This document shows positions 12,301-30,300 of a stretch of 64,000 nt of DNA, one piece after another. A model generated the notes under the pieces. The model had not been told where the DNA came from. It did not search any database and worked only from the letters and a program-made list of their open reading frames with translations. The DNA is from Pavona decussata (Eukaryota). Location: positions 2,108,001 through 2,172,000 of the forward strand of contig CDRNST010000091.1 in assembly GCA_977016875.1 (NCBI GenBank). The letters are read 5' to 3'. The translations under genes were made by a program, and so were the position numbers. How positions within the stretch are numbered: position 1 is the first letter of the stretch; the number at the start of each line of letters is the position of its first letter.

Positions 12301-15300
12301 ACAGCTACAAGTTCACCCACCCACCAAACCTCCCACCTTGGGAAGCGTTGCTGTTGCGAGGCCATCCAGGCATGACATGTAACAATATTTAAGAACAAGG
12401 TCACAAAGCAAACACCGCATTTTAAAGCAGAGGTCTACAACATTCACAAGCAGCAGATGCAACATTATTTTAGCCAAACATGTAGGCCTGTGAACACTCT
12501 AAAGAGCTACAGCGTACATCACATTTCACATAAGCTTTTCCTTTCACAATAAAATACCGAATATGTGCCCTACTACTGTGAGCATGTTTTAAAGTTTTGG
12601 TGGGGACTAAATGGAACAGTGGGCTTATCATATTTTTTGGTAGCTCTCTAAGGCTGTCACATGAAGTGAAACCTGCTCATTTCACGTTCCTATTTGTCAC
12701 CTCCATTTCACTTTCAAGAACAGCAAGCACCACTTACCATGCATGCACACGTATCTTTCTGCTTATTCTTATTAAATGCAAGCAAGAAATTTTGATTTTG
12801 GTTTATAGCAAATTAAGTGTTTGTCTATTCTTGTTCCTCAGCGCACAGATGAAGATGTCCAATCTCATCTACAGGCTGCAGAACAGCTCTCTGAGGCAGA
12901 AGGTAGTTACAAAGCAGCCATCAGAGTCATCACAGATGAACTGCAGATTGCATATCAGAGATTTAAGACCCTTCTTGCAGATTACGAGGTGCTCTTGTCC
13001 ATGTCAGCAACATTTTACACAAGTGTTGAAAAGGTGAGTTGAGGTCTGTTTCTATCTACCTAAAATTTGGTGATTTTTCTCTAATTGACATGTGCTTTGT
13101 TTGAAGACTTGGAATTCAGAAAGAGCAGTGACGAGAACTTACACATGGCGAATTTGTTGTTGTTTTTGAAATTTTTAGTGTTCTTTTCAAAGCTCTTCTA
13201 CCTCGACCACTGGTTAGTGTGATTTCAATATTTGAGAACTGACAAAAAATTCAACCCACATAAAAAATTTTAGCATTTATTCTTGGATATTAATCCATGC
13301 CAGAGGCACACACATCACTGTGTCATCAACCTTTTTGAGTTCAAGTTTAGATATAATAGATTGATTTCTACATCTGGAAGGAATGGTTAAAGCCCAGTGA
13401 TATGACTTTTTAATTCCAAGATTAGTGTTGAATAAGTTACACTTTTAAGTGTTCTCAACACTGATTTCCTTCGCAGCTTCTGCAAATGATGGATGACATG
13501 ACCTATGGAATACAAAATCAGCCTCTTCCAAGAGATACAAACAATGCACAGCTCCTGCTTCAAGATCATCTTGCCAACTACCAGACAGTCCAGGATCTTT
13601 ACAACTTCACCACTGTGAATGCCCAAGATGTGCTGAGCCGGGCAGCCACGTCATCTGCGGTCTCTGTGTCCCGCGAAGAGATCAAAGGCTTCCTTGAAAA
13701 GTCAGAAGGGAGACATGACGAGTGGCGTAGCCTTTGGGAACATCATAAGGACAAGCTGGAGGAAAGTGTCCGCCTGTGTGAATTTGAACAGGCTATCAGT
13801 ACGGTAGGTTTTCATGGTTTGGTTTTGAAACAAAAACCATTTAATGGAATGAATGTGTCACTGACTTCATGTAGCATGTTCGAGTTTATAATTCCTTTGA
13901 TATCATGACTGTGTCATTTGGTAACAGTTTGGCATTTGTAGGATAGGGTAGTCATCGCCCTTTCATTTTACGTTCAAGTCCCAGCCTCGTGGACCATGGT
14001 GCTGAATTATGAGACATCTCTATGGCAGACGCAATCTGGAAGAGCACTGAGCTCTGGGAGTCATACGGATGTTTGAGCTTCCTCCTGCACCATACCTTTA
14101 ATTCACAGAAAGGAAATACTGTACTATGATAAACGAGATGTATTAGATGAATGCACTTTCTTAGTCAAAGTAATTTTGCTTCTTTGCTTTTCTTTTGTAG
14201 GTCAATCTTACTATTGAGGAACACACTCGGGAACTGCTGGCTCTCAACCGAAAATTTGGTGTCACTCTGCTTGATGCTGTTACTCTGCTGCAAGAGTCAG
14301 ATGCATTTCTAGAATCAGTCAAGGTAGGAAGGAAAATTGAGTAACCATAATATCAAGCGTTAAGCATCTTCATCCAATCACTGTAAACCCCTCCTGCAAT
14401 AATACATGTTCCTTGAAATGTATGTTTGAGAAAGCTGATACCTTTGGGATTGGTTGCACATGTGTGTACTGATGTTTATTCATGTTCATGGTATGGATAC
14501 CTTTAATCTAGATGTAGCTCTAAGTACCAAGTGAAAAGTAAGTTGACAGTTTTGACTTCATTCTTGCAAGAAGTGAGTATTGAGAATTGAGTTTAGCATC
14601 AAGAGTCAGTTTACTTGAAACTGTACTTGATTTCCTGTACTCCATTCGTGTGAAAAGAGCTCAAGCAAAATATCTTGATTACTCATGCAAGGTTGAAGCT
14701 TTGAGAAAGTTATTTATGCTTTCAAGAGAGACCAACAACATTGTTTGCCTAGAGCACCACAACTAAATTTGTAGGTTTTGGTACACACCATGGGACTTGT
14801 CCCCACTGTGTGTAAATGATGGGACCTTTTGGAGAGTTCTACAAAACTATCCTAGGGAATGAGCTCACATGTGAGGGGACTTTTTGATGGGAGAGAATGT
14901 TTTGGTCTGCAATTGATATATTTTTTATTTGATCGCAAGGGTTTGTTCCACAAAGTAGATGTAATTGTTTGTAATTTGTAATTTAATGTAATGCAATTTA
15001 ATGGCAATGTAATTTGTTTGTGTTTAAGGGCAAGTTTATGGTAATCGACCTCATGATTCTGTGGAATGGGTCTTGCTCCCCCCAAAAAGATTTCAGGGTC
15101 AAAATGGTTGAATAGCTTTACCTGTATGTGATTTAAACCTGCAATCATTACATTGTTCTCACAGCCTGCAGATAGAGAAGTTGGTAGACTGGTTGATGAA
15201 GCAGAAAAGCTGAGGCAGATAAATCACCATGATGCGCCTGCTATTATGCGGCAAGTATCTGCAATGGAGTCTCGCTGGCAGAGATTTCTGTCCAGGATGG

Positions 15301-18300
15301 AAGACCACAGAACCATGCTGGAGGCATCAATTGAATTCCATCAACTTTATGAACAGGTCTGCTTAAGATATTAACTTTACCTCAGCATACTGTTTTTTGT
15401 AGCCTACATTGCAAATTCATGTTTTGTGGATTCCTTGTTTGACAGTTTTCCCAGGGTAATTTGGACTGGAAAATATTTTGTACTCAGAGTCATCATAGTC
15501 AATCCAAAGATTCTCTGTTGTACTTCCTTGTTGTACTATAATTACTCACAAAGAGTGGGGAAGGTGCCGATGAGCGAGCACTTCCCTTGCACCAACTTGG
15601 CCTGGGTTTGATTGGCAGCACGTATGATAATTATGTGGATTGCGTTTCGTTTTGGTTCTCATCCTTACTTCCTGAGTTTTTTCTGTGACATTCTTCATTC
15701 CCACCACTTCACAAAAACAAACAAAACAAAGCAAACAATATTTCTTTAATTTTTAACAATTCAATCTGTGATCTGAGGGTTGTTGGTTAGTCAGTTGTCC
15801 AGGGACTCCCAGTTGGCTTGATAGTTCAGTTGGCAGAGCACTGCACCGGTATAGAAGAGGTCATGGGTTTGAATCCCATTCAAGCCTGAATTTTTTTTGC
15901 AACTACTTAAGTTGTGTTCATAACTACAATGGTCATTCACTTGTTCATTTTTTCCAAGGACTGTTACATTGTAATAATATTACTGTTACCCTAATGTGCC
16001 ATGCAAGTACCAGTAGTGCTTTCAACAGCCCAGGATTACTGTAAACAGTAACTTTTAACACAAAACTATGAATCCACTTAATCTGTTTTGTAGCTTGTCA
16101 CATTGTATAATGTGCAGGGTAATAAGTTCTCTCACATCAGGTTTATCTTCTTTCTTGCAGGCTTCAGTTTGGATCAGTGACAGTGAGCACTTTGTGAAAA
16201 CCACACGAGATGGAGCAAAGAGATGCAAAACTGAGGAAGAAGTTGTAGATCTTCTTGACATGTTGGAAGGCTTCGTAAAACCAGGCCTCAACAAGCAGGA
16301 AGCCCGACTAAAGAAACTGGCTGAACTCTCTGCTAAGCTCACTATGGATGAACCTCGTTACAAAGCCAAGGACCTCATGGCTAAACAGAAAGAAATTGCT
16401 ACCAAGTTTGATCTCATGGACAATGATCTTTTCCGTTTGGCAGAGAGACTCAGAGAAAGGAAACAAAGAGGGCTGCCTCCTAAGGTGAACATACTCAAGA
16501 CAAGTTATCATTCTAAGGCAGAGGTCAAAGACATAACTGTCATTTGCATGTTTTCACTGCTGTGAGCAAAATGTTGTAAAATTTCAGACTGAAAAGATCC
16601 ACGAAGCAAGGAAGGAGAATCTAAGAAAATTCTATCAGCATTCTTTCTTGACTTGAGTAGTCAACTTGAAACACTGGGAGTTGATTCCTAGGCTAAAAAT
16701 AATTAATGTTTAATCTATTTTCTATGAAATAATGGTTGACCCTTGGTTAGAGAAAGAGTCCTGAAAGCATGAAAGTTTTGAACAGCTTTTATTTATTTTT
16801 TGCGGGTGTTTTATTAACTTTCATGTAATCCTTGTTCTGTTAATTGGTTTCTCTTAGGCAGAGGAAGTTACATCAGAAAGCATTGAGGCTTATGAGAGAG
16901 AACTGTCAGAATCAGCTCCTGTCTCAGCAGAATATGGGAAACCAGTGCGGGTGAATGTCCTGTCATCTTTCATTGATGGTGTACTGGGTAGCAAGAGGCC
17001 AGGTGATCGAGAAGTGTTTGAAGAGGCCGGGCCAGCCAAACGTCCTCAGGTGTCTGTCAGAGTCAGGTCCGATACACCAGTAAGCTTAGAAACTGAACAG
17101 AAGATTGCACCCATCATCAAGTCAGAGATCCAGGGATGGTTTGAAGGTGGCAAAGCTGTAAAACCTGCTGAGATCCCAGAGCACGAAATTCTGGTTCACA
17201 TTAGTGAAGATACCAAGAGAGAACCCAGTGAAATGGCTTTGGCTCCTTGGGGTGCTGAAGTGGTGAAGAAAGATGTCACAGTCACCTCATTAGGGCCATT
17301 TGTTAGCAAAGACATTGAAGTTGAAACAGCTTTGCACACAGAAACACATCGGCCAACCTCGTCAGAGCAGGCTCAGCTTGTAAGGAAGAGGGTGTGGAAG
17401 ACAACGACAAGGGAAACCACCACCAGCATTAAGCAAGAGACAAGAACTGAAGTTGAGATGCTGGTTCCAGAAAAACCTGAAATGACATCAAATCTCTATG
17501 TTTTTGGTGCATTACCACCCTCTGAGAATCTGAATGTGGAGGTGAAGTCCAAGACATCTGTTGAGAGCACACCCGATACCATGGACAAGACAAGCCCCAA
17601 AGAAATCAGCAAAGTTGAAAGAGAAATGCAGACTGCCAATGAGAACATCTGCAGGAGGATTGAAGAGTCCGTGGCGAGTAGTCGTAGGCCGTAAGTACAC
17701 AACACCCTCTAAACGTTTTCCTAAAAAAAAAAAAACATTACCTGCTGTGGGTGTTTCTTAAATGCATGGTTTCGATTCTACACTTTCTAGACAACTTGTG
17801 ACTACAGGTACAATTAACCCTCGCTATAACAGACATCCAACGGACCACAACAGAGAAAGTCCATAAGAGCGGGAGGGTTTTTCAGTCATTCTTATTCCCT
17901 GAGACTTAAATGCTGTCCGTAATAGCTAAGAGTCCGCAAGGTAGGAGTTTACTGTATGTGTTAAAGTGGAAATATGGATGTCACTCCCTGAACTTATGCA
18001 CCAGTAGTTACAGTTTGTTTCCAATATTCTCATTCTGTTTACTTCATGCCGCAACTTTCGTTTTATTTCTTAGATTTGAACTAAAAAAACACGCTGAGAT
18101 TCTCATTCCCCAACATGCTGGTTCAGTTCTGATCTTCACTCCTCCTGGCACCCCGAGAAGAGACTCTGGCCCATGTATTGACTCAAGTCAGCTCACTAAT
18201 GGCCATGCGGGTGATGTAGACCAACCAAAAGTGGAATCTGAGGTGCATCTTATGAGGACGCCCCAGGACTTTGATTTTGGTGCAGTAGAGCTGACTATTC

Positions 18301-21300
18301 CCTCTCCTTTTGTGAATGGGGAAGTGCCTGACTTGGAGAAAGAAGCTGCTCTGCAACGAATGAATGACATCACTGGCAAATTGATTGAAAGTGAGGAGAA
18401 ATACTTGGATGATTTGAGATCTCTTGTTGAGGTATGGAGTTTGTTAGTTTTGTGCAACCAAGTTATGCACATAAAGTAATGCAACTGCTATTTAAGCCAA
18501 TGGCATGCTAGGCTGTAAGGTAAGGTAGAGGTAAATGTAGAGTAGGGATGTTTTCAAGCGCTATTAACGTCAAGTGACAAAGGAAATTTTACTCCTGCTG
18601 GATAGGATGGTAGTTCACCCTATGACCTTGTCCTTCAGCATTTTGTTAGCATTTTCTTAAACTTCGGCAATGCCCATTTAGGCCACATAAACACCACTAG
18701 AGCTTGCTAGGGGTCAGTAAATATGGACCATACCAAAATCATCAGATGTTTTCTATTTGTCAGGTCAGGTAGCTGACCTTGTCGGGTTTTCACCAAGACC
18801 CCTCCCTTATCTGGAAAACTGTGGTCTGGTAATGAGACAGTTAATGGTTTGTATCTCTAAATTCTGGTATAATAATCAAGTCAGTCATTTCCTTTTTTTG
18901 CAGGATTACATCTATCAGCTTCCCAAAACTCCATCCGAGATTTCAGACAACAAAGACACCATCTTTGTCAACTCCGAGGACATCTTTTTCTTCCACAAAG
19001 TGTATGTTAATTTTGATTGACAAGCAATTTAGGATCCTTTACTTTTTAATTGGACATTTTTAAGTAACATTTATTAACACATTATGTGAAGGACTATATG
19101 ATTGTGTTCTCAACGCAATGTATGCTGTCAGTGAATGTTTTTAGTTTTCATCAAGTCATGCAAAGCAATAATTTATTTACTCCATTTGATCATCTCTTTT
19201 GGGAGCAAAGTTAAAGCATAGCAGTGAGAGTACTCCCATCAGTTTGGCCAAGGTTGAGTCCTCTTCTAAAAATCATTTATGTCACTGAATTGGTTTCTGT
19301 TGGTTCTCAATCAATTCTTTGCCGTGTTCTCTATTTGGGTTGCCATGTTCTCTTTCCTCCATAAAAACAAACATTGCTGAATGCCAGAAATCCAAGGGTG
19401 TCAGGTTTGTGAACCATAAGACTATTAATTTGAATACTTGCCTTATTAATTAAGTTAACTACTACAATTTATTTTCATGTGATTATTTACAGTATCTTTT
19501 ATGATGAGCTGAGTAAGTGCAGAGGAATTCCTTCAGATGTTGGCCAGGTGTTTACAAAAAGGGTAAGACAAGATGACTCATCAAAAATTGCAGCAATAGT
19601 TGTTTTTGTAGAGTGGTTTTCAGTCGAAGGTGGAGAGTAATTTCCCTTTACTTCGGTTTTGCCTTACTGTATTCTGTGATTTGTTAGTGAAATGAACACT
19701 TTCTCAACTGATGAGGAGCAAAAACAAAACCAAATTGTGACTTGCTTTTACGTGCTGTACATGTGGTGCAGTGATAATGTTGTATAAGTTATGTCTGTGG
19801 TACTTATCATTTAGAGGGAAAACCTGGAAGTTCCGGGCTGGGATGCGTTGTTCCATTTGGGACATTTCTGAAATTATGGGCTCCAGATCATGAAGTCATG
19901 CACTTTTACTGCTCCTTTTGGGATTTGCAGTTGATGCTGAAGCATTTTGCATGTTGTCCATCTTCTGTTGGGACAGGCTAAATCATTTCACATTCATGCC
20001 GGAAATTCAGGTTTCCATAGGATCTGAAACGATCCTAAAATCAGCCAACAAAAATTCTGTAGTCATTTGGACACAAATGTCTGAAATAATTTGCCATTTT
20101 CTGCTTCAGTGGTCATGACCACTGAGGATTACAAAAGGTAGAGCCTTGTTCCATCCCTTGTTATCTTTTGTCTGTGATCAACTGGGATCAATGTTGATGG
20201 TGCAATCGTCTATGAAAGGACTGGTTTTGTTTGCGCGATCGAAATTCAGAGCAGGGTACATAAGTAGTTCATAATTGGCCATTTCTATCATCATGAAAAG
20301 TATCCAGAGAGATTAGGTCACTTTTTTTCCAATCATGCATTCACAATCCCTTGCAATTATGATATGGAACATGTCTCTGCAATCATCCACAATTCGCAAA
20401 ATGAGCAGCTCCCAGTTGGCTTGATAGCGTAGATGATAGTCAGAGCACTGCACTGGCATCACAGAGGTCATGGGTTTGAATCCTGTTCAAGCCTGAATTT
20501 TCTCAGGCTTTCTTTTCACAACTGCATATTTAAGTTGCATTCGTCACTATGACGGCCTTATTTTTTTTTTTATCTCTGATCCTGTGATTGTTTGGAAACA
20601 TACGGAAATCAGGGTAATATATGAAAGGTAGATAACAAACTCAACTCCTATCTGTGATTTTGACGTTTTTCTTAGCAGTGCCATCCAATTAACTTACTTC
20701 TAATCTACTGTATCTCAATTAATGCCTAATTCTGTCTTTCGTTTTGTTTCCCTCTAAAAGGAAAACGAGCTTGACAGATACATCACCTTCTGTGATGGAA
20801 AAAGTGACTCAGCTAACTTTATAGAATCACATCCTAAGGATTTCTTCAAGGTAAGATTTGATTAATCAACTTAAAAAAGTTCATCTCCTTCTTGTCGATA
20901 TCCCTAAGAATTCAGTAGTGTGCGAGGACAATTTCCTCCAAATGATAATTGCCTTATTTTCATCACATTTCTGATGACATTGATAAAGTCAGTAAAGCGT
21001 CATTAGCTCCTTTTGTTAGTATCCCGTTGTTTGAGTAATTAGAAAGCAGGTCAGACTTGGAGACAGAAAGGTCAAAGGCCATTTTTCTATTGAGATAATT
21101 ATGTCATTTGTGAAGATAGACTACTTGTCTCAGACAAATTATCCGTCTCAGGTGCATAACTGGTCCTGTTGTGAAAAGGCTCTTAGCGTTAGAGCCTCTT
21201 ACCTGCTTAGGATAAGATGGATAAAGAGATAAGTAACCTAAAAAATTATTTCTCATTAAGGAAACAAACATCTATATCAGGTGTTACACTAAGACGAACA

Positions 21301-24300
21301 AATTGTCTGTGTCACAGTGTTAGCAGTTTATAAGGTAGAGTGTTTCTTACATTTTCATTTTCAACTCTGTAGAACTGTGAGGAAGCAGCATCTTGTCATC
21401 CCATTGAAGAACTTCTGGATCGTCCTGTTGAGCGTGTTTTAGAGTACAGAGCATATCTCACTGATCTACTGCAGTGTGCTCGTAAGGCTGGTGTTGATAC
21501 GCATGACCTGGAGGTACTGCTTTTACGAATTGAAACCCCCTGCTTGCGTGATGTGCCTTTGTCTCTAGGCTTTCTTGGTTTTTCCTATTCTCCAGTTTCT
21601 TTTACTCTGTGCTTTTCGTTTATTGAACTAAGTAAGTGTTAATTTAACATCTGCTGAATTTGATGTTCTTGAGAAGAGATCTTAACCCGGTGATGACATC
21701 ACAAAAGCTGGGAAATTATGAGATCTGATGAGATATTCGAAAAGAGTGTGCTTAAAAATGCAAACTTGCCGAAAATCAGCATCTTGCTCATTTGGGGATG
21801 AGGTGTTGGCTCTTTTATGCTTGGATGACTCCATACGAATCCTTCTAATTTTACCTTAGTTCTTAATGAGAAGGATCTGTTTAGCAGAGCGTAAAAACGC
21901 CAATGCATTGATTTTTGTCAAGTTAGCATTCTTTATTATGCTCTTTCAGAATATCTTATAAAATTGCACATCAAAAATTTAAGTAATTGTGATGTCACAC
22001 TTGAGCACTCTATGGTTGCATAAAAAGACAGTAGTTGTCTGTGCATCATTCTTCTTTACACCAACCAAAAGTTGAAAATGGCGGTAACAAGTTTAATAAT
22101 CTATGCATAGTACTGTAAAGTTCCAAATGTAAGCGAGAGCTTGTATTTGTTGAAAGAACTCTTCAAAAGGTTTATTTTTGGAAGGGGCTTGTTTTTCCTT
22201 TTTGTTTAAGGGGTATATGGGAGGGAAATTTGTATTTCAAGAATTTGTTGGGCGTGTTAACGAAAAGAGATTTGTGTGCCGACGTTGCGAGCATTAGCCG
22301 TTTGTCAGAACAAATCCAATTTGCTCTGACACTCGAAACATCAGCACTCGAACCTGAGTGAGAACCTCTTTACAGTCAACACTGTTGATAAAACCAAACA
22401 TTTGCTTCTACTCCCGAGATTCTACAAGCATACTTTGTGGTGGGCTTGTTTTTGGAAGAGCTTATGTTCAGAATACTACGGTATTCTTGCTGAGTGTTTT
22501 CCTTGTGCCACGAAAGATTAAAGTGAGAACACTATCTTTGTCTAAACAGTCACAACCATGTTGCTTATCTTTCTTTCTTTCTTTCTTTGCTTTTCTTTTC
22601 AGGCTGGAAAGGAAGTAGTAGATCGCCTTTGGGCCGAAATTACTCAGCAGACTCAGTAAGTTAATGCTTTAAGAAAGCTTTCAGATACACATTTTTACAT
22701 GATTGATACTGGGGTATAAACCAAATCTCAGTACAGTGATCTCTCGACTTTCACTCAACAGATGTAAGATTTTTGATAAGAAGTCCATTTGATCAACATG
22801 CAATGACAAGCAGTATTGTATTATAGGGGCAGTGGCTGGAGTTTTTTCATTTAAGCCAAAGGAGTGAAGTTTTCTTAATAACAGTTCTAGGGTATGAGCT
22901 CCTGGAATATTCCAGAAAATTGGAAATCTAGAGGATTCTATTGTAGGGAAAGTATCATGGGTTTTTGATATCTTTTGTTAAAAATGATGAAATAGGATTT
23001 TCAATCAGCTGCCAAATAATTCTAGAATGGCGAGAGAAAAGAAATCAACTCAATTCGTGAAAGGAACAACTCGAGATCTGTTCTAGCGCATTTTGGAAGC
23101 AAAAATGCGAGAACTTGAAAAACATTAGCCTAACATTTTTCAAGTTTCAATCCATACCAGCCTACTCTGTCTCTGGCCAGAGGCACTAATCGACAGTTTT
23201 ATTGCACTGGGGTGATAATTTATAACAAACGTGACAATTATTTCGTTGTTTCTGCTGACAGACAAACATTTTTGGGTTTTGAAATGACAGTAAATTTGCG
23301 TGATACTTCCCCTTTAAGTTGTTGGAACTCACGGATGATTCGTGAAGACGTCCCAGGATGAGATGTATCTTTAGGGATTGTATATACCTCTGGCTTAGAA
23401 ACATCAGGATTCGTTGTTAGTTTAGGAGACCTTCATGAGTCTGGCTCCTACATATTTATTGTTACAGTTGAGCCCCTCTTTAAGTGGCCACTCTATTGTA
23501 GATGGCAAGTGGCTATTTTATATGGGGTCATTGAAAAATAATATAAGGCGTAGTAGGAACGTCACTACTTGGACAAAAAAAAAATGTTGGTTTGTGACAG
23601 GTGTTGCATGTATTATACAACCTGTTATTCACAACTTTCAGTGTCGTGTATTCTCTGATTCGTTGCTTGAAAGTGGTTTGACTGTAATTGAATGATTGCA
23701 ATTAATTTTTCAGGTTTGAGATCCTTGTTACTGAGACACCAAAGGAGGTTGAGCTCTGCGTTGCATTACAAGATTTCAGAGACGAGCTGAACAACATCTG
23801 CCTTCAAAAGGAAGACACAGTTTTGGTCCTGGATCGGGTTTCATGCCCAGGAATGTACAAGGTTGTCAGGTTTAGATCTGATGGGTCTAGGGGCGATGAA
23901 GTCTGGGTGCCATCATCAGTTTTACGGCGCAAGAAGTCAACAGCTGAAATTATCATGCCAGCTGAGTACACGGTAAAGCTCAAGTCAAAACCTGGGCCTA
24001 AACTACCAGAGGAAATTGCAGAAATGACCATGCCTGCTCCTGAAAGGGAGGTGGTTGTGGAAATGTCTCCAGTTGAGCTAGCACCAGCTCCAGCTGCCCC
24101 TGTATTTATCGTGCCATTGGAAAATCAGACGGCAACAGAAGGCCAACCAACACAGCTGGATGTCCGTGTTTCTGGCATCCCAAAGCCAGAGGTGTCATGG
24201 ATTAAAGATGATCGCCCAGTCAGAATAGGAGAGCGTATCCATGCTCAGAAGAAAGGAGATTTGTTCAGTTTGAAAATATCAGAGGTTGATATTGAAGATG

Positions 24301-27300
24301 AAGGGACATACACTTGCCAGGCAACAAATGCAGCTGGGACAGCCACGTCTAAGGCAGAGCTAAATGTTGAATGTAAGGGAATCAACTTCTTAGGATGTGT
24401 GTCATATGTGGTAACTGACCAGATAGGTTGTTTAGTCAGTTTGCAAATGGAAGGTGCCACTTTTTTTTTTACTTCGTTTTACTAATTGTTCTGAGTGGTT
24501 ACCATGTTATTGAATGACCAGTTGGCCTGGCCAGTTTGGACAAAATTAATGTTAAACTCAACAGGTCAATATTTTTCTGTTTAGTGCTGTGCATTCCTTT
24601 TGGAACACACTGTTGGTCGAAAACTGAACAAACAATGTGACTCGATCCACGCGAAGTTATTTGTTTAATTATTCCACTTTTAAATACCTTCTATCGTTTT
24701 TAGCGTTCCTTTCTATTTATCAGTCATGCTATTATTTTCTTATATTGTTTAGATGTGAATATCTTATAGTCAGTATCTCATTAGTATTTTCACAATTATA
24801 TATAAGCACATGCTAATTTTTACTTCTCATCTTGAACTTGAAAATGACCGTCGGACGGTCGAAACGTCGTTTTCTTTTAGCGTTAACTTTCATAGGTAAA
24901 TCCAGTTCCCCTAAACCCATAAATTATTGAGAGCGCACTTTGCTGGGGACTTTTGAGAGTTTTAAATATAAAGACACCTTAATGACTTAAAGGATAGCTT
25001 GTTTTTCTTTGTTTGATTTCAGCTGTTGAGTCAGAGGGAGAACCAGAAGTGGAGGAACCACAGATCACTGTGATTAAGATGTAAGAACATTTTGCCAACC
25101 AGGAGTTGCATTCTAATTAATATATTTTGATGCTTCTTGTTCTAATTCCAAAAGCAATGAGTTTTCGCAGAGCATTGCTTGAAAGAAAGAAAATAAAATG
25201 CTGATTTTTGGAATTGTTGTCATCATGGAGGACACTTAAAAAGTCAATGTTATGGAGCCTTTGTCGTTTAAATGCTAAATAGATAGGGTGCTAGGGAAAG
25301 ATAGCCTTGGGACCGTCAGAGAAGAAGGACTAGAGCCTTGCATTCATGATTTAAGAACCTTCTTACTGTAGTAATGTTGCAGATGCCCCCTAATTGGAAC
25401 TGTGTAAATCATTTATTTTCTACAAGATTTACATTTCACATCCATTTTGTTGTATCATTTGCAGAGCCCGAAATCAACAACCTCCGACAGTGACATTAAC
25501 AGGAATAGATGGGACCGACTTCCAACCAATCCAAGTTCAATTTCCTCAACCTGATGAGATTAGTGCATCTGAAATCCATGTGATGACAGAAAGTGTCCCC
25601 ACAGCTCGTCGACGATCCATTCCTCCAGAATTCTCTACTGAGCTAGATGACAAGACTATAGAGGAGGGTGATTCTGTGGAGATGCAGATCTTCGTCACTG
25701 GCACACCTCCACCCGAAGTGATATGGTACAAAGATGACCAACCAATTACAATCTACCCACACAGACGATTCCATGCAATGAGAGAGAATGACATCTGCAG
25801 CTTGGAGATCAAGGATGCACGATGCAGTGATGAAGGAAACTACACATGCAGAGCTAAGAACACTGCTGGGGAAGTGAGAAAGTCATGCAAACTAATTGTT
25901 AAGCAAGTTACACCAACTAGCCCTCCAGCTTTTGTAAAACAGTTGAAGGATGTGTACATTGTAGAAGGTTCGTGTACTCGGTTTGATGTCAAAGTCACAG
26001 GAATGCCAGAACCTGAAGTCACCTGGTATAAAGATGGGCAGCCTTTGAAGCAAGACAAGCACATTGAGGTCATCCATGATGAAGATACATCTGCGCTTAT
26101 CGTTATGTATGGGAAGCCAGAAGACGCAGGTGATTACACATGTAAAGCTGTAAATGATGCTGGAGATGCAGAATCATCAGCACATCTGCACATCTCACCG
26201 TTACAATTACCTGCTAAATTCACCTCACCAGTAGGAAATGTTGAAGTGTCTGAGGGAGAACCAGCAAAGCTTAAATGTACAGTAATTGGAAGGCCTGATC
26301 CAAACATAACATGGTTCAAAGATGATCAACAGCTCCACGAAAATAATAGGTTCAAAATGAAGGTGACCCCAGACAACACTTGTATCTTGACCATACAGAA
26401 GTCCGACATGGATGATGAAGGAACTTACACATGCACAGCGACGAACTCAGCTGGTAAAGATACCTGTTCAGTGAAATTAAAGGTCAATGGTGAGGGCAGG
26501 GCGCCAGAGTTCACCAAAGTCTTGGAGAATGCTGAAATACCAGATGGTAGTCCAGTGCGTTTTGAAGTTCATGTTCAGGGAAAACCAACTCCATTTGTAG
26601 AATGGCTCAAGGGAACAAAGGTCCTCAAACCAGGTCCACGGTTTGAAACTCAGACAAGTGAAAACTCGCACACATTTGTCATAACAAACTGTAGAGATGA
26701 TGACAGTGGGACTTACATGTGCAAAGCCCAGAACAAGTTTGGTACCGCTACTTGTGATGCAACACTCATTGTTGCAGAAGACACTGTACCCCCAAGGTTT
26801 ACAAAGAAGCTGTATGACTCAACGGCAGATGCTGGCAACACTGTAGAGTTTTCTGTCAAGTACATTGGCAGCCCGGAACCAAAGGTGAAATGGTTTTTGG
26901 ACGATGAAGAAGTTTCTGAAGATGATGAGGGCATGGACATTGAGACTGAGCCAGGTTCATCGTTACTTGTGCTAGAGGACATAGCACCAAATGATTCTGG
27001 GCAATACAAATGCATCATTACCAACATTGCAGGAAAGGCAGTAACAAGTGCACAGCTCAAAGTTGTAGAAGAAGGGGTTAAGGCTACACCGAAGATACCG
27101 ACTGAAGTTGTGAAAACTGTGGCTCCATCAACTGAGAAAGAGCCAAGTGGAAAACCGCCAGTGTTTCTCAAAAAACTGGTGACTCTCCATGCAGTTGAGG
27201 GCGATGCAGTTCGGCTGCAAGTGATAGTCGATGGAACACCAAAGCCTACTGTCCAGTGGTTTGTTGAGAATGATCTTGTGCAAGAAGATAGGCATACTCA

Positions 27301-30300
27301 TATCATTCATGAGGGAGATATGCACGCTTTGGTAATTACCAAGACCATCCTAGATGATGAGGCAGAATACAAGTGTGTGGCAGAGAACTCATTTGGACAG
27401 GTAGAATGTACAGCTGAACTGTTTGTTGATGAAGTCACCATTAAGCCCGAGTTTGTTAAAAAACTTAACCCACTTGAAGTGGAAGAACAAAGTGATGCCG
27501 TGTTCCAAGTACAAGTGCTTGGAAATCCAGAACCAGATGTTTTGTGGTTTAAGAACAATATCCCCATTCATCCAGGTGGCAGATATGAAGGGAAAAAAGT
27601 AGAAGATTTACACACACTCATCATCCATAAAACAACACCGAAAGATTCTGGTGAACTGAAATGCCAGGCTAGGAATGATGCTGGTAAAGCTGAAAGTGTT
27701 GCTCCACTGCTTGTGAAGCCAGTCACCGTAAAGGAAATGTTACAGGCTCCCTCATTCATTAAGAAACCTCACGATGCACATCTCATTGAGGGAGGTTCTG
27801 CTTCCTTTGAAGTCCAAGTGGATGGTACACCCAAGCCTACTGTCACATGGTATACTGAGGAAAATGAAGAAATACCGGAACGAGGCCACATCCGCTGTCT
27901 GCCTAATGGAACTTTAGTCATTGACCAAGCAGAACTTGATGATGAAGGCTTATATAAATGCATTGCTTCAAATAAGGCTGGAGACGTATCTTGCAAAGTG
28001 GAGGTGTTTGTGGATGAAGTCACCAGTAAAGTGGATGAGATTATTGAAGAAATTCCAGTTTCTCAGAAAGCTGTAGTAGAAAGTGAGATTCCCATTGAAG
28101 GTTTACTTGTAGAGCCAACAGAGAAAGCGACACCACCAGAAATAACAAGGAGGTTAAAAGATGTCAAAGTAACAGAGGGTGATACAGCACGATTTGAAGT
28201 AGAGGTCACTGGAAATCCCAAACCTTACGCTCATTGGGCAACTAATGGTGCAGAGATAACAGGAAACGAAGAAACAATTATGGAAACCAGCGGTGACACT
28301 TACAGGCTTATTTTGAAGGATGTTGTACCAGATGACGAAGGAGAGTACACATTCACGGCAAGAAATGAAGCTGGTAAAGTGTCGTGTACGGGAAAGCTGT
28401 CAGTCCAGGAGAAGATTGTAAAGCCATCTTTCTTGGATGCTCTCAAAGACATTGAAGTTACTGAAAACAGTGATGTGCGGCTGGAAGTTCGCGTGCAGGG
28501 GACGGAGCCTGATATTGAGTGGTACAGAAATGGTGTTGTCGTTGAGGAAACAACATCTCGAACAGAGTTCGTTGAGAATGAAGAGAGGGGAAGCTATGCA
28601 TATCTCATTTATGGTGCCACAACAGAAGACCAAGGCACCTATCGGTGTACAGCAGTAAATGAGGCTGGTGAAGCATCTTGTGAAGGAAAGTTGACTGTTA
28701 GAGAAAATGTTATTCCTCCAAGATTCATACAGCGCCTTGAAAACAAAAAGGCTGTTGAAGGGAGTGATGTGAACTTGGAAGTGGAGGTCAGTGGAAGGCC
28801 CAAACCAACTCTAAGGTGGCTGAAAGATGGTACTCACGTTGCTCCTGATAGTCATCTTCAAATAGACACAGAAGGCCGCATTCATACGCTGTCCATTACT
28901 CGGGCCAGACCATCTGATGGTGGCCAATACAGCTGTGTTGCATCCAACAGCGGTGGTAGAGATACCTGCTTTGCTAATCTTGAAGTTGAGAAAGAGATGC
29001 ATGCTCCAGAATTTGTTGTCCAGCCAGAGGGAGTACAGATTGTCGAGGGTGGCCAAGCTCAGTTCGAAGCAGTTGTTTCTGGTCTACCAGAACCAGAAAT
29101 TGAGTGGTCTAAAGATCGAAAGCTCATACGAGACAGTCATCGTTTCAAGCTCGAGTTTGATGGAAACAGATCAGTTCTTACCGTGAAGGGTGCAAAACAG
29201 ACTGATGATGGAGAATTCACTTGTACAGCAACAAACAAAGTGGGAAAAGTTTCTTGTACTGTAGAACTAGTTGTTGAAGAAGCAGTTGTTGCTCCTGAAT
29301 TTGTGAAGAAAATGAACAGTATTGAATTGTGTGAAGGCGACTTGGCCAGATTTGATATCCGTGTCAGTGGAACTCCTCAGCCAGAAGTACAGTGGTTCAA
29401 GAGTGACAAATCTTTGGAGGGAGATGAACGCTATGAGTTCCTCTCAGATGATGACATGCATTCTTTGGAGTTGTCAAATTGTCTTTTATCAGATGGTGGA
29501 ATTTACCGTTGCACTGCGTCAAATGAAGCTGGACAGACAACTTGCAGTGCAGAACTTATTGTCAGCGAGAAACCTATCCCTCCAGTGTTCACAGACGAAC
29601 CAACGTTTCCCGAGATGATGGCAGAGGGTAGCGATGTTGTGCTAGAGGCCACTGTTAGTGGGAAGCCTGTGCCAATTGTAGAATGGGTGAAAGATGATGC
29701 TACTTTACAGAACGGTAGCCATTTTAACATCAAGGCCGAGCATGGCAAACACACATTAACCATCTCAGGTGCTGGCCCTGATGACTCAGGAGTTTACAAA
29801 TGTGTTGCAAATAATCCAGCTGGATCATCCATTAGGACATTCAATGTAAACATCAGAGGTAAGAATTTTCTTTAAGCTTTTACCAGAAACTGTGTTAGTA
29901 CATCTCATTGACAATGTCAATAAGTTAAACAGAAATGGCACCTCTGCAGTCATTCTTGTGCCATGCTTGATTTCTGAACATAGCAGGATGGCATAGAGCC
30001 CTTGCGGTAATGGCAGTTAACCTTTCCAAAGTTCAAAACACGATTTGATATGAGAATTTCTAAACGTAGTTGTGGTGATGTGGTAGTCAAGCTGTTAGCG
30101 GGTGATGTGGAACGTCTGACCTTAAGGCTGGTGGTTCAAATCATGGTCTTTGCTATTAGGTCATTTGATTTGATGAGAAGCTTTGCTTCACATTGTCTCG
30201 CTTTGCCCAGCTGTAAACCAGCAAACAATTACGAAAATATAACAATGTGCAGGAGGTAACTAGTGATTGTCCGGCACTAACAGCTGACAATCATGACCCT

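What the first reader, a model, noticed from the sequence alone, without database searches (positions are those of the whole stretch)
18345..23940. PH-less, probably catalytically dead DH domain spliced straight to SH3
Seen: six small exons (four absent from the ORF track) build a full DH domain. Its last helix (AGKEVVDRLWAEITQQTQ) runs within ~12 aa into the SH3, and I found no PH exon in the adjoining introns. The CR1 'EL' is KL, the CR3 'KPVQR' is RPVER, and the usual helix-6 Asn is absent. Known: Dbl-family DH domains almost always have an adjacent PH domain, and these regions contact the GTPase switches. Inference: this is a pseudo-GEF kept as a structural or binding module.
Basis: partly seen in the sequence, partly recalled or inferred. 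Interest (0 to 1): 0.7.

Follow-up and report, generated by a model that had tools for sequence, protein, structure and literature searches.

The report
PH-less, likely inactive DH in coral connectitin
A giant coral muscle-type protein (the recently named "connectitin") has a Rho-GEF-like DH domain joined straight to an SH3 domain with no PH domain and without the usual catalytic residues; it is kept under purifying selection, so it is probably a non-enzymatic binding or structural module.

Summary
Spliced RNA contigs give the exon chain ..18431 | 18904-19001 | 19493-19562 | 20761-20850 | 21373-21513 | 22603-22655 | 23714.. with GT..AG borders. No exon lies between the last DH exon and the SH3 exon. 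Five of the six exons match Trio, Kalirin, p63RhoGEF or UNC-89 DH domains at collinear positions. A structure model confirms the SH3 fold, with Kalirin SH3 as best match.

No PH domain is present. No PH HMM hits the intron's open stretches. In five other coral genomes the same 53-nt exon is followed by an intron of only 219-893 nt, with at most 67 open codons.

The CR1 Glu is Lys, the CR3 Lys is Thr, KPVQR is RPVER and the helix-6 Asn is Thr. Among corals the Glu site varies (K, R, T, E) inside an otherwise conserved motif. dN/dS of the DH exons is 0.07-0.20, so the domain is kept.

The gene is the cnidarian "connectitin" published in 2025, a TRIO/KALRN paralogue. A second, canonical SH3-DH-PH module lies about 20 kb past the window's end. 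PH-less and inactive DH domains are already known (9 of 74 human Dbl proteins lack PH; BCR; perhaps obscurin).

Verdict: real, well supported, moderately interesting. Loss of catalysis is inferred, not shown.

The parts
15132..16562 (+). Spectrin-repeat exons upstream of the DH (15132-15371 and 16059-16562)
   Evidence: Pfam Spectrin E=1.1e-5 and 3.6e-6
16858..17691 (+). Long linker exon between the spectrin repeats and the DH, probably disordered
   Evidence: Open frame; 52-87% identical in coral orthologues; only exon-sized fragments found in the protein library
18135..18161 (+). Conserved FTPPGTPRR motif (PxxPxR, a possible SH3 ligand or proline-directed phosphosite)
   Evidence: Nearly invariant in the coral orthologues (FSPPGTPRR in L004; two show PPGS/PPDT variants); function is inferred
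18336..18431 (+). DH exon 1 (CR1); the invariant Glu is replaced by Lys at 18378-18380
   Evidence: RNA joint 18429/18431>18902/18904; alignment to p63RhoGEF positions 5-36; donor GTATGG
18904..19001 (+). DH exon 2
   Evidence: RNA contigs; 48% identity over 25 aa to a millipede UNC-89 DH; conserved in corals
19493..19562 (+). DH exon 3
   Evidence: RNA joints; Kalirin DH positions 64-84
20761..20850 (+). DH exon 4
   Evidence: RNA joints; Kalirin/Trio DH positions 90-115
21373..21513 (+). DH exon 5 (CR3): RPVER at 21421-21435; Thr in place of the CR3 Lys at 21460-21462
   Evidence: Pfam RhoGEF E=0.0047; p63RhoGEF E=4e-4 and Trio GEF2 E=6e-4
22603..22655 (+). DH exon 6 (last helix, 53 nt); Thr at 22642-22644 in place of the helix-6 Asn
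   Evidence: 53 nt in the RNA records and joint 22655>23714; splice sites; same 53-nt exon in five other corals
22656..23713 (+). Intron between DH and SH3; no PH exon; holds a high-copy repeat at about 22950-23350
   Evidence: Skipped in all RNA contigs; no PH family in 18 open stretches; repeat depth about 2e4
23714..23945 (+). SH3 domain of Kalirin type (strands at about 23751-23930)
   Evidence: AlphaFold2 mean pLDDT 75.8; the 50 listed Foldseek matches are SH3 or SH3-like folds, best Kalirin SH3 1wfw; weak sequence hits
24099..24368 (+). First I-set Ig domain, in the same exon as the SH3
   Evidence: Pfam I-set E=4.5e-26

Best explanation
This is the first Dbl-homology (DH) domain of the coral 'connectitin' gene. 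Connectitin is a giant TRIO/KALRN paralogue built of SEC14 and spectrin repeats, then this DH, a Kalirin-type SH3, a long run of Ig domains, and further downstream a second SH3-DH-PH module.

Shown: the domain is encoded by six small exons and is spliced directly to the SH3 exon. It has no PH domain in any of six coral genomes. It carries substitutions at the three residues most important for nucleotide exchange (CR1 Glu to Lys, CR3 Lys to Thr, helix-6 Asn to Thr). It evolves under strong purifying selection.

Inferred: it no longer catalyses GDP/GTP exchange. It is kept as a folded helical module at the junction between the spectrin rod and the Ig chain. There it serves protein-protein binding or mechanical coupling. 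It may bind a Rho GTPase without exchange, or work together with the neighbouring SH3 and the conserved upstream PPGTPRR motif.
For: EXON CHAIN AND JUNCTION: direct DH-to-SH3 splice in RNA contigs.

DH IDENTITY: collinear DH matches exon by exon.

SH3: fold confirmed.

NO PH: no PH family in the intron's open stretches. The genome-wide six-frame PH and RhoGEF scans listed no candidate in the window. The same exon-level Pfam scan does detect the PH of the downstream module (PF22697, E=1.4e-8), which serves as a positive control. Orthologous DH-to-SH3 introns are 219-893 nt, with at most 67 open codons and a stop right after the donor.

CATALYTIC RESIDUES: substitutions seen in alignments to p63RhoGEF and Trio GEF2. 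They persist or vary across corals; the Glu site is K, R, T or E within a conserved motif.

SELECTION: dN/dS of 0.07-0.20 for the DH exons.

LITERATURE: the CR1 Glu and CR3 Lys are important for catalysis, and BCR is a 'pseudo-GEF' (PMC5727386). Trio-subfamily GEFs rely on their PH, and obscurin showed no activity in vitro (PMC10118190). Gene identity comes from PMC12198301.
Against: Pfam scores are below the family cut-off for every single exon.

The helix-6 Asn equivalence rests on spacing, not on a scored alignment.

One divergent coral (L004) keeps the CR1 Glu, so the loss is not uniform.

Some PH-less DH domains are active GEFs. Bud3 is one example (PMC4085707; that it lacks a PH is from my memory); Tuba and ARHGEF10 are further examples from my memory.

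The RNA runs are labelled RNA only by guess, although spliced contigs can only come from RNA. X1, X2 and X5 are one sample.
Confidence: 0.7

Rival explanations
1. It is an atypical but active GEF. On this reading the PH-independent DH uses other residues, or the neighbouring SH3, to catalyse exchange on a particular cnidarian Rho-family GTPase.
For: The fold-defining motifs are conserved under purifying selection. L004 keeps the CR1 Glu. Some non-canonical DH domains are active, for example Bud3 (PMC4085707).
Against: Three key catalytic or contact residues are replaced together. The Glu position drifts K/R/T/E among corals, which an active site would not tolerate. Trio-subfamily DH domains are poor GEFs without their PH (PMC10118190).
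Confidence: 0.18
2. It is a decaying relic of the TRIO/KALRN-like ancestor with no present function, on its way to the complete loss seen in bilaterian CCDC141.
For: Bilaterian counterparts (CCDC141, zormin) are described with spectrin repeats and Ig domains only (PMC12198301). The catalytic residues and the PH are already gone.
Against: dN/dS is 0.07-0.20. All six exons are intact, in frame, ungapped and of identical length in six coral genomes. The exons are spliced into long transcripts.
Confidence: 0.04
3. The missing PH is an artefact. On this reading a PH exon exists but is used only in an isoform not sampled, or was missed by the scans.
For: Only contigs from one sample were laid. Exon-level HMM scans are weak for short exons.
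Against: Orthologous introns of 219-384 nt in four corals cannot hold about 100 codons. No PH hit appears in any open stretch. The same method does find the PH of the second module.
Confidence: 0.02

Closest known systems
Cnidarian 'connectitin' (SESTD1-CCDC141-titin connected gene; Hanashima et al. 2025, PMC12198301)
   Same: Spectrin repeats, numerous Ig domains and an SH3/RhoGEF/PH group on one strand of one locus; a coral. First-stage notes place SESTD1/CCDC141-like exons just upstream.
   Different: [quoted passage not shown] It does not describe this first DH between the spectrin repeats and the Ig chain, its lack of a PH, or its changed catalytic residues. The figures could not be read here.
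TRIO / Kalirin GEF domains with their SH3 (Trio subfamily of Dbl GEFs; also p63RhoGEF/ARHGEF25)
   Same: These give the best sequence matches of the DH exons and of the SH3. The order spectrin repeats, DH, SH3 is shared.
   Different: TRIO and Kalirin have DH-PH tandems with an intact CR1 Glu, CR3 KPVQR/LLLK and helix-6 Asn. Here the PH is absent and all of these are replaced.
Obscurin / UNC-89 SH3-DH-PH
   Same: A giant Ig-rich muscle protein carrying a Trio-subfamily DH. Human obscurin DH showed no GEF activity in vitro and was discussed as a possible pseudo-GEF (PMC10118190).
   Different: Obscurin has the order SH3-DH-PH and keeps its PH. That arrangement matches the second module of this coral gene (L008), not the DH of the finding.
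BCR DH domain and other 'pseudo-GEFs'; PH-less Dbl proteins
   Same: These DH folds lack the CR1 Glu and CR3 Lys and have no detectable activity (PMC5727386). Nine of 74 human Dbl proteins lack the tandem PH (PMC8305018).
   Different: BCR keeps its PH. The human PH-less members belong to other subfamilies, and three of them carry a BAR domain instead. None is a DH fused directly to an SH3 inside a spectrin-Ig giant.

Membership tests
Dbl-homology (DH / RhoGEF, PF00621) fold | About 180-200 residues with CR1, CR2 and CR3 in order, recognisable by profile | tested here: met
   Five of six exons hit DH domains at collinear positions. The total is about 183 codons.
Dbl-homology (DH / RhoGEF, PF00621) fold | Score above Pfam's gathering cut-off (27.6 bits) for the whole domain | tested here: inconclusive
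   Only single exons could be scored. The best is exon 5 at 17.6 bits.
Catalytically competent Dbl GEF | Invariant CR1 glutamate | tested here: not met
   Lys in the window, aligned to 'sELvETE' of p63RhoGEF. It is K, R or T in other corals and E only in L004.
Catalytically competent Dbl GEF | CR3 KPVQR motif and the Lys of LLLK | tested here: not met
   RPVER, and AYLT in place of LLLK. The same pattern is seen in all corals.
Catalytically competent Dbl GEF | Helix-6 Asn | tested here: not met
   Thr in the window and L001, Arg in the other four orthologues, at the 14th residue after DLE. The equivalence is by spacing.
Catalytically competent Dbl GEF | Measured nucleotide-exchange activity | not testable with these tools
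   Needs a biochemical assay.
Trio subfamily DH-PH tandem | PH domain directly after helix 6 | tested here: not met
   RNA junction 22655>23714. No PH HMM hit. Orthologous introns are 219-893 nt.
SH3 domain | Five-stranded SH3 barrel | tested here: met
   AlphaFold2 mean pLDDT 75.8. The 50 listed Foldseek matches are SH3 or SH3-like folds, and the top one is Kalirin SH3 1wfw.
Connectitin (PMC12198301) | Spectrin repeats, then many Ig domains, then a central SH3/RhoGEF/PH group in one locus | tested here: met
   Spectrin. Ig exons fill the window and continue to C91:2190951. SH3-DH-PH in L008. That all parts sit in one transcript is not shown.
Connectitin (PMC12198301) | N-terminal SEC14 domain and C-terminal kinase domains | not tested
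   Both lie outside the window. SESTD1-like exons upstream are reported only in first-stage notes.

The most novel reading that the evidence does not exclude
The DH-SH3 pair is the surviving trace of the TRIO/KALRN GEF1-SH3 unit inside connectitin, and it records a stepwise decay. The PH was lost first, together with the CR3 Lys and helix-6 Asn (already true in the most divergent coral, L004). The CR1 Glu was lost later within scleractinians. The whole unit was lost in bilaterian CCDC141 and zormin. In corals it has been taken over as a non-catalytic module at the spectrin-to-Ig junction. There it may sit clamped between the conserved PPGTPRR motif and the SH3, or hold a Rho GTPase without activating it.
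Probability: 0.35. Interest if true: 0.55.

Novelty: new member of a known kind. Interest (0 to 1): 0.35.

Why it matters
The finding gives a clean, naturally occurring example of a DH domain that lost its PH partner and its catalytic residues, yet stays under strong purifying selection. This occurs inside the gene proposed to be the ancestor of titin. It adds detail to the TRIO/KALRN-to-connectitin story and offers an intermediate between a working GEF and the GEF-free CCDC141 of bilaterians. It also supplies a natural comparison for the open question of whether obscurin-type DH domains are pseudo-GEFs, because the degenerate DH and a canonical DH-PH sit in one locus. It is not a new kind of system.

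Tried and rejected
1. My first guess for DH exon 4 (20949-21035) was wrong. The RNA joints place it at 20761-20850.

2. The search of protein representatives with the linker exon returned only exon-sized fragments and no full-length model.

3. The search for homologous proteins was run three times: with the Ig exon, the SH3 part and the E1 part. It returned only single-exon ORF products from coral genome contigs. So no spliced orthologue protein was available for Pfam, structure prediction or superposition.

4. Exon 2 gave only a chance hit (Pygopus) in the PDB search.

5. The genome-wide six-frame PF00621 scan did not list the window's DH exons at all. That shows how degenerate or short they are; it does not show that they are not DH.

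6. I considered whether the gene is obscurin/UNC-89-like with the order SH3-DH-PH. I rejected this for the finding's DH, because that order belongs to the second module in L008.

Full report
WHAT IS THERE.
The window is a 64-kb piece of a coral genome, G000:C91:2108001-2172000 on the + strand. Exons of one giant gene on the + strand fill it from end to end.

- Spectrin-repeat exons lie upstream of the finding (Pfam Spectrin E about 1e-5 to 1e-6).
- A 278-codon linker exon follows at 16858-17691.
- Downstream are long Ig-domain exons, including a 1493-codon open frame at 25394-29875.

EXON CHAIN.
I laid Logan contigs of four runs on 18150-24120. Three runs of 'organism A' hold long spliced contigs (6825, 12072 and 666 nt). 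Their joints are 18429>18902, 19001>19493, 19561>20760, 20848>21371 and 22655>23714. All are GT..AG once the tool's stated shifts are applied.

- The tool dropped the 21513>22603 joint row because of a simple repeat at 22559-22602.
- That joint is still fixed by the records' own coordinates: exactly 53 nt separate the 21371-21513 piece from the 23714 piece.
- The splice sites were read directly: TTTTCAG|GCT at 22603, CA|GTAAGT at 22655, and TTTTTCAG|G at 23714.
- The codon map is E1 ..-18431, E2 18904-19001, E3 19493-19562, E4 20761-20850, E5 21373-21513, E6 22603-22655, E7 23714 onward.
- The 12-kb contig runs more than 6 kb of mRNA upstream and 4.7 kb downstream. So the DH sits in long transcripts that link the spectrin and Ig parts.
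- Caveats: X1, X2 and X5 are one sample, and the runs are labelled RNA only by guess. Spliced contigs can only come from RNA. The fourth run (a coral metatranscriptome) gave unspliced contigs of a relative and adds nothing on splicing.

IS IT A DH DOMAIN?
The joined protein was never built, searched or folded. Each exon alone is weak, but the hits are collinear on DH domains of one subfamily.

- E1 matches p63RhoGEF (2rgn_B) residues 5-36.
- E2 matches a millipede UNC-89 DH, 48% identity over 25 residues.
- E3 matches Kalirin DH residues 64-84.
- E4 matches Kalirin/Trio residues 90-115.
- E5 matches p63RhoGEF 136-172 (E=4e-4), Trio GEF2 (6e-4) and Kalirin (9e-3), and Pfam RhoGEF positions 120-170 (E=0.0047).
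- The six exons add up to about 183 codons, the normal DH length.
- E2 gave only a chance hit in the PDB search.

THE SH3.
Sequence hits are weak: SH3_KALRN at E=0.19 and Kalirin SH3 1wfw at E=0.1. I therefore aligned the exon with 14 coral orthologues (A1) and folded it.

- AlphaFold2 gives mean pLDDT 75.8 and a strand pattern typical of SH3.
- The 50 listed Foldseek matches in the PDB are SH3 or SH3-like folds, and the top one is Kalirin SH3 1wfw.

NO PH DOMAIN. Four lines of evidence agree.

1. The RNA contigs splice 22655 directly to 23714.
2. Eighteen open stretches of 22 residues or more on the + strand of the intron gave no PH-type Pfam family at E up to 10; the two largest stretches of the preceding intron also gave none. 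The only hit in the DH-SH3 intron was a faint hAT-transposase match. Bases 22950-23350 of the intron are a very high-copy repeat (depth about 2e4).
3. A six-frame scan of the whole genome with PF00169 listed no candidate in the window.
4. I fetched the orthologous loci of five other coral assemblies (L001-L005).
   - All DH exons and the SH3 exon are present in the same order, ungapped. L001's locus is cut before E4.
   - E6 is 53 nt in every genome and ends in GT[AG]AGT, with a stop right after the donor.
   - The intron to the SH3 exon is 893, 384, 326, 241 and 219 nt, with at most 67 open codons. That is too little for a PH of about 100 residues.

Positive control: the same exon-level Pfam scan finds the PH of the gene's second module (PF22697, 35.3 bits, E=1.4e-8).

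CATALYTIC RESIDUES.
- The p63RhoGEF alignment 'vlsELvETEkmYvdDL' against 'ditgKLiESEekYldDL' puts Lys (18378-18380) at the invariant CR1 Glu.
- 'KPVQRimKYQLLLKDFL' against 'RPVERvlEYRAYLTDLL' gives three changes: Lys to Arg, Gln to Glu, and the CR3 Lys to Thr.
- The helix-6 Asn is the 14th residue after the DLE/DLQ motif in p63RhoGEF, Trio GEF2 and UNC-89. The coral has Thr there, and Arg in the other four orthologues. This last equivalence is by spacing only.
- PMC5727386 states that a CR1 Glu and a CR3 Lys are important for catalysis. [quoted passage not shown]
- PMC10118190 shows that Trio-subfamily GEFs depend on their PH, and that obscurin's DH had no activity in vitro.

COMPARATIVE SIGNAL.
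- The CR3 and helix-6 changes are shared by all corals.
- The CR1 position is not fixed. It is K in most, R in P0151, T in P0152-P0155, and E in the most divergent locus L004. The flanking LIE[ST]EEKYVDDLRSL is conserved.
- Drift at the one position that active GEFs never change argues that catalysis is no longer selected.
- The domain as a whole is selected. Nei-Gojobori dN/dS, summed exon by exon, is 0.07-0.20 for the DH in the unsaturated pairs. The SH3 gives 0.05-0.24.

WHAT GENE IS IT?
First-stage notes on neighbouring windows call the upstream part SESTD1/CCDC141-like. That led me to PMC12198301 (Hanashima et al., J Mol Evol 2025).

- The paper names the connected SESTD1-CCDC141-titin structure 'connectitin' and identifies TRIO/KALRN as its ancestral paralogue.
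- A weak RhoGEF candidate at C91:2193367 led me to L008 (C91:2192001-2202000).
- L008 holds an SH3 (Pfam E=4e-4), a DH with a canonical CR1 (ILGELVESERQYVNDL, RhoGEF E=0.0035) and KPAQH in CR3, and a PH.
- Ig exons on the + strand fill the gap from the window's end to that module, and continue beyond it.
- So the finding's DH is the first, degenerate DH of a protein that also carries an obscurin-type SH3-DH-PH. That both lie in one transcript is likely but not shown.
- The paper's text does not mention a PH-less first DH. Its figures could not be read, and its supplements hold nothing on this.

HOW IT MOST LIKELY WORKS.
Shown: a conserved, expressed, PH-less DH fold joined by a short linker to a Kalirin-type SH3, lying between a spectrin rod and an Ig chain.

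Inferred (about 0.7): it no longer exchanges nucleotide and is kept as a binding or structural module. Possible roles:
- holding a Rho GTPase without activating it;
- docking another partner;
- forming a clamp with the SH3 and the near-invariant upstream FTPPGTPRR motif (18135-18161). This motif fits the class II SH3 ligand pattern PxxPxR and also a proline-directed kinase site. Both readings come from my own knowledge and are untested.

Rivals:
- an atypical active GEF (about 0.18);
- a functionless relic (about 0.04, contradicted by dN/dS);
- a missed PH isoform (about 0.02).

NOVELTY.
PH-less DH domains and inactive DH domains are both known. Nine of 74 human Dbl proteins lack the PH, and seven of 20 tested showed no activity (PMC8305018). 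BCR (PMC5727386) and possibly obscurin (PMC10118190) are named examples. The gene itself was published in 2025. What is new is the description of this particular domain and its graded decay among corals, so I rate it a new member of a known kind, of moderate interest.

LIMITS.
- No full-length or spliced orthologue protein could be retrieved; all database hits were single-exon products.
- Therefore no whole-domain Pfam score, no structure of the DH, and no superposition on a GEF-GTPase complex was obtained.
- The species behind L001-L005 are unnamed ENA assemblies. Only corals were compared, so when the PH was lost within Cnidaria remains open.

Noticed in passing
G000:C91:2192225-2200780 (L008:225-8780), about 20 kb past the window's end: A second module in the order SH3-DH-PH, with a canonical CR1 Glu (ILGELVESERQYVNDL) and a PH exon scoring PF22697 E=1.4e-8. 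Ig exons on the + strand connect it to the window.
   Followed up: partly
window 18135-18161: The motif FTPPGTPRR is nearly invariant across the coral orthologues, about 65 residues before the DH. It fits the PxxPxR SH3-ligand pattern and a proline-directed kinase pattern. It is a possible intramolecular partner of the SH3 behind the DH.
   Followed up: no
window 18378-18380 and orthologues (P0149-P0159, L004:5133-5363): The position of the invariant CR1 Glu is K, R, T or E in different corals, while the neighbouring residues are conserved. The most divergent locus, L004, keeps the Glu.
   Followed up: yes
window 23714-24390 versus L002:6443-8288, L003:7591-9318, L005:6136-7766: SH3, linker and first Ig form one exon in the window (continuous in the RNA contig up to 24120) and in L001. 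In three other corals they are split into four pieces. This indicates intron loss in this lineage or intron gain in the others.
   Followed up: partly
window 22950-23350: A very high-copy repeat, abundant in RNA contigs (depth about 2e4), sits inside the DH-SH3 intron. A faint hAT dimerisation-domain hit lies beside it. The repeat explains why this intron is 1058 nt here and 219-384 nt in four of the other corals.
   Followed up: partly
window 20350-20550 and 15772-16041: A SINE-like repeat whose translation reads ..RGHGFES.SSLNF.. occurs twice in introns of the gene. Contig depth reaches about 1e5 in the coral metatranscriptome run.
   Followed up: no
L005:23198-24479 (- strand): A Ty3/PEG10-type gag-protease open frame (a retrotransposon) lies downstream of the orthologous Ig exons in another coral assembly.
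   Followed up: no
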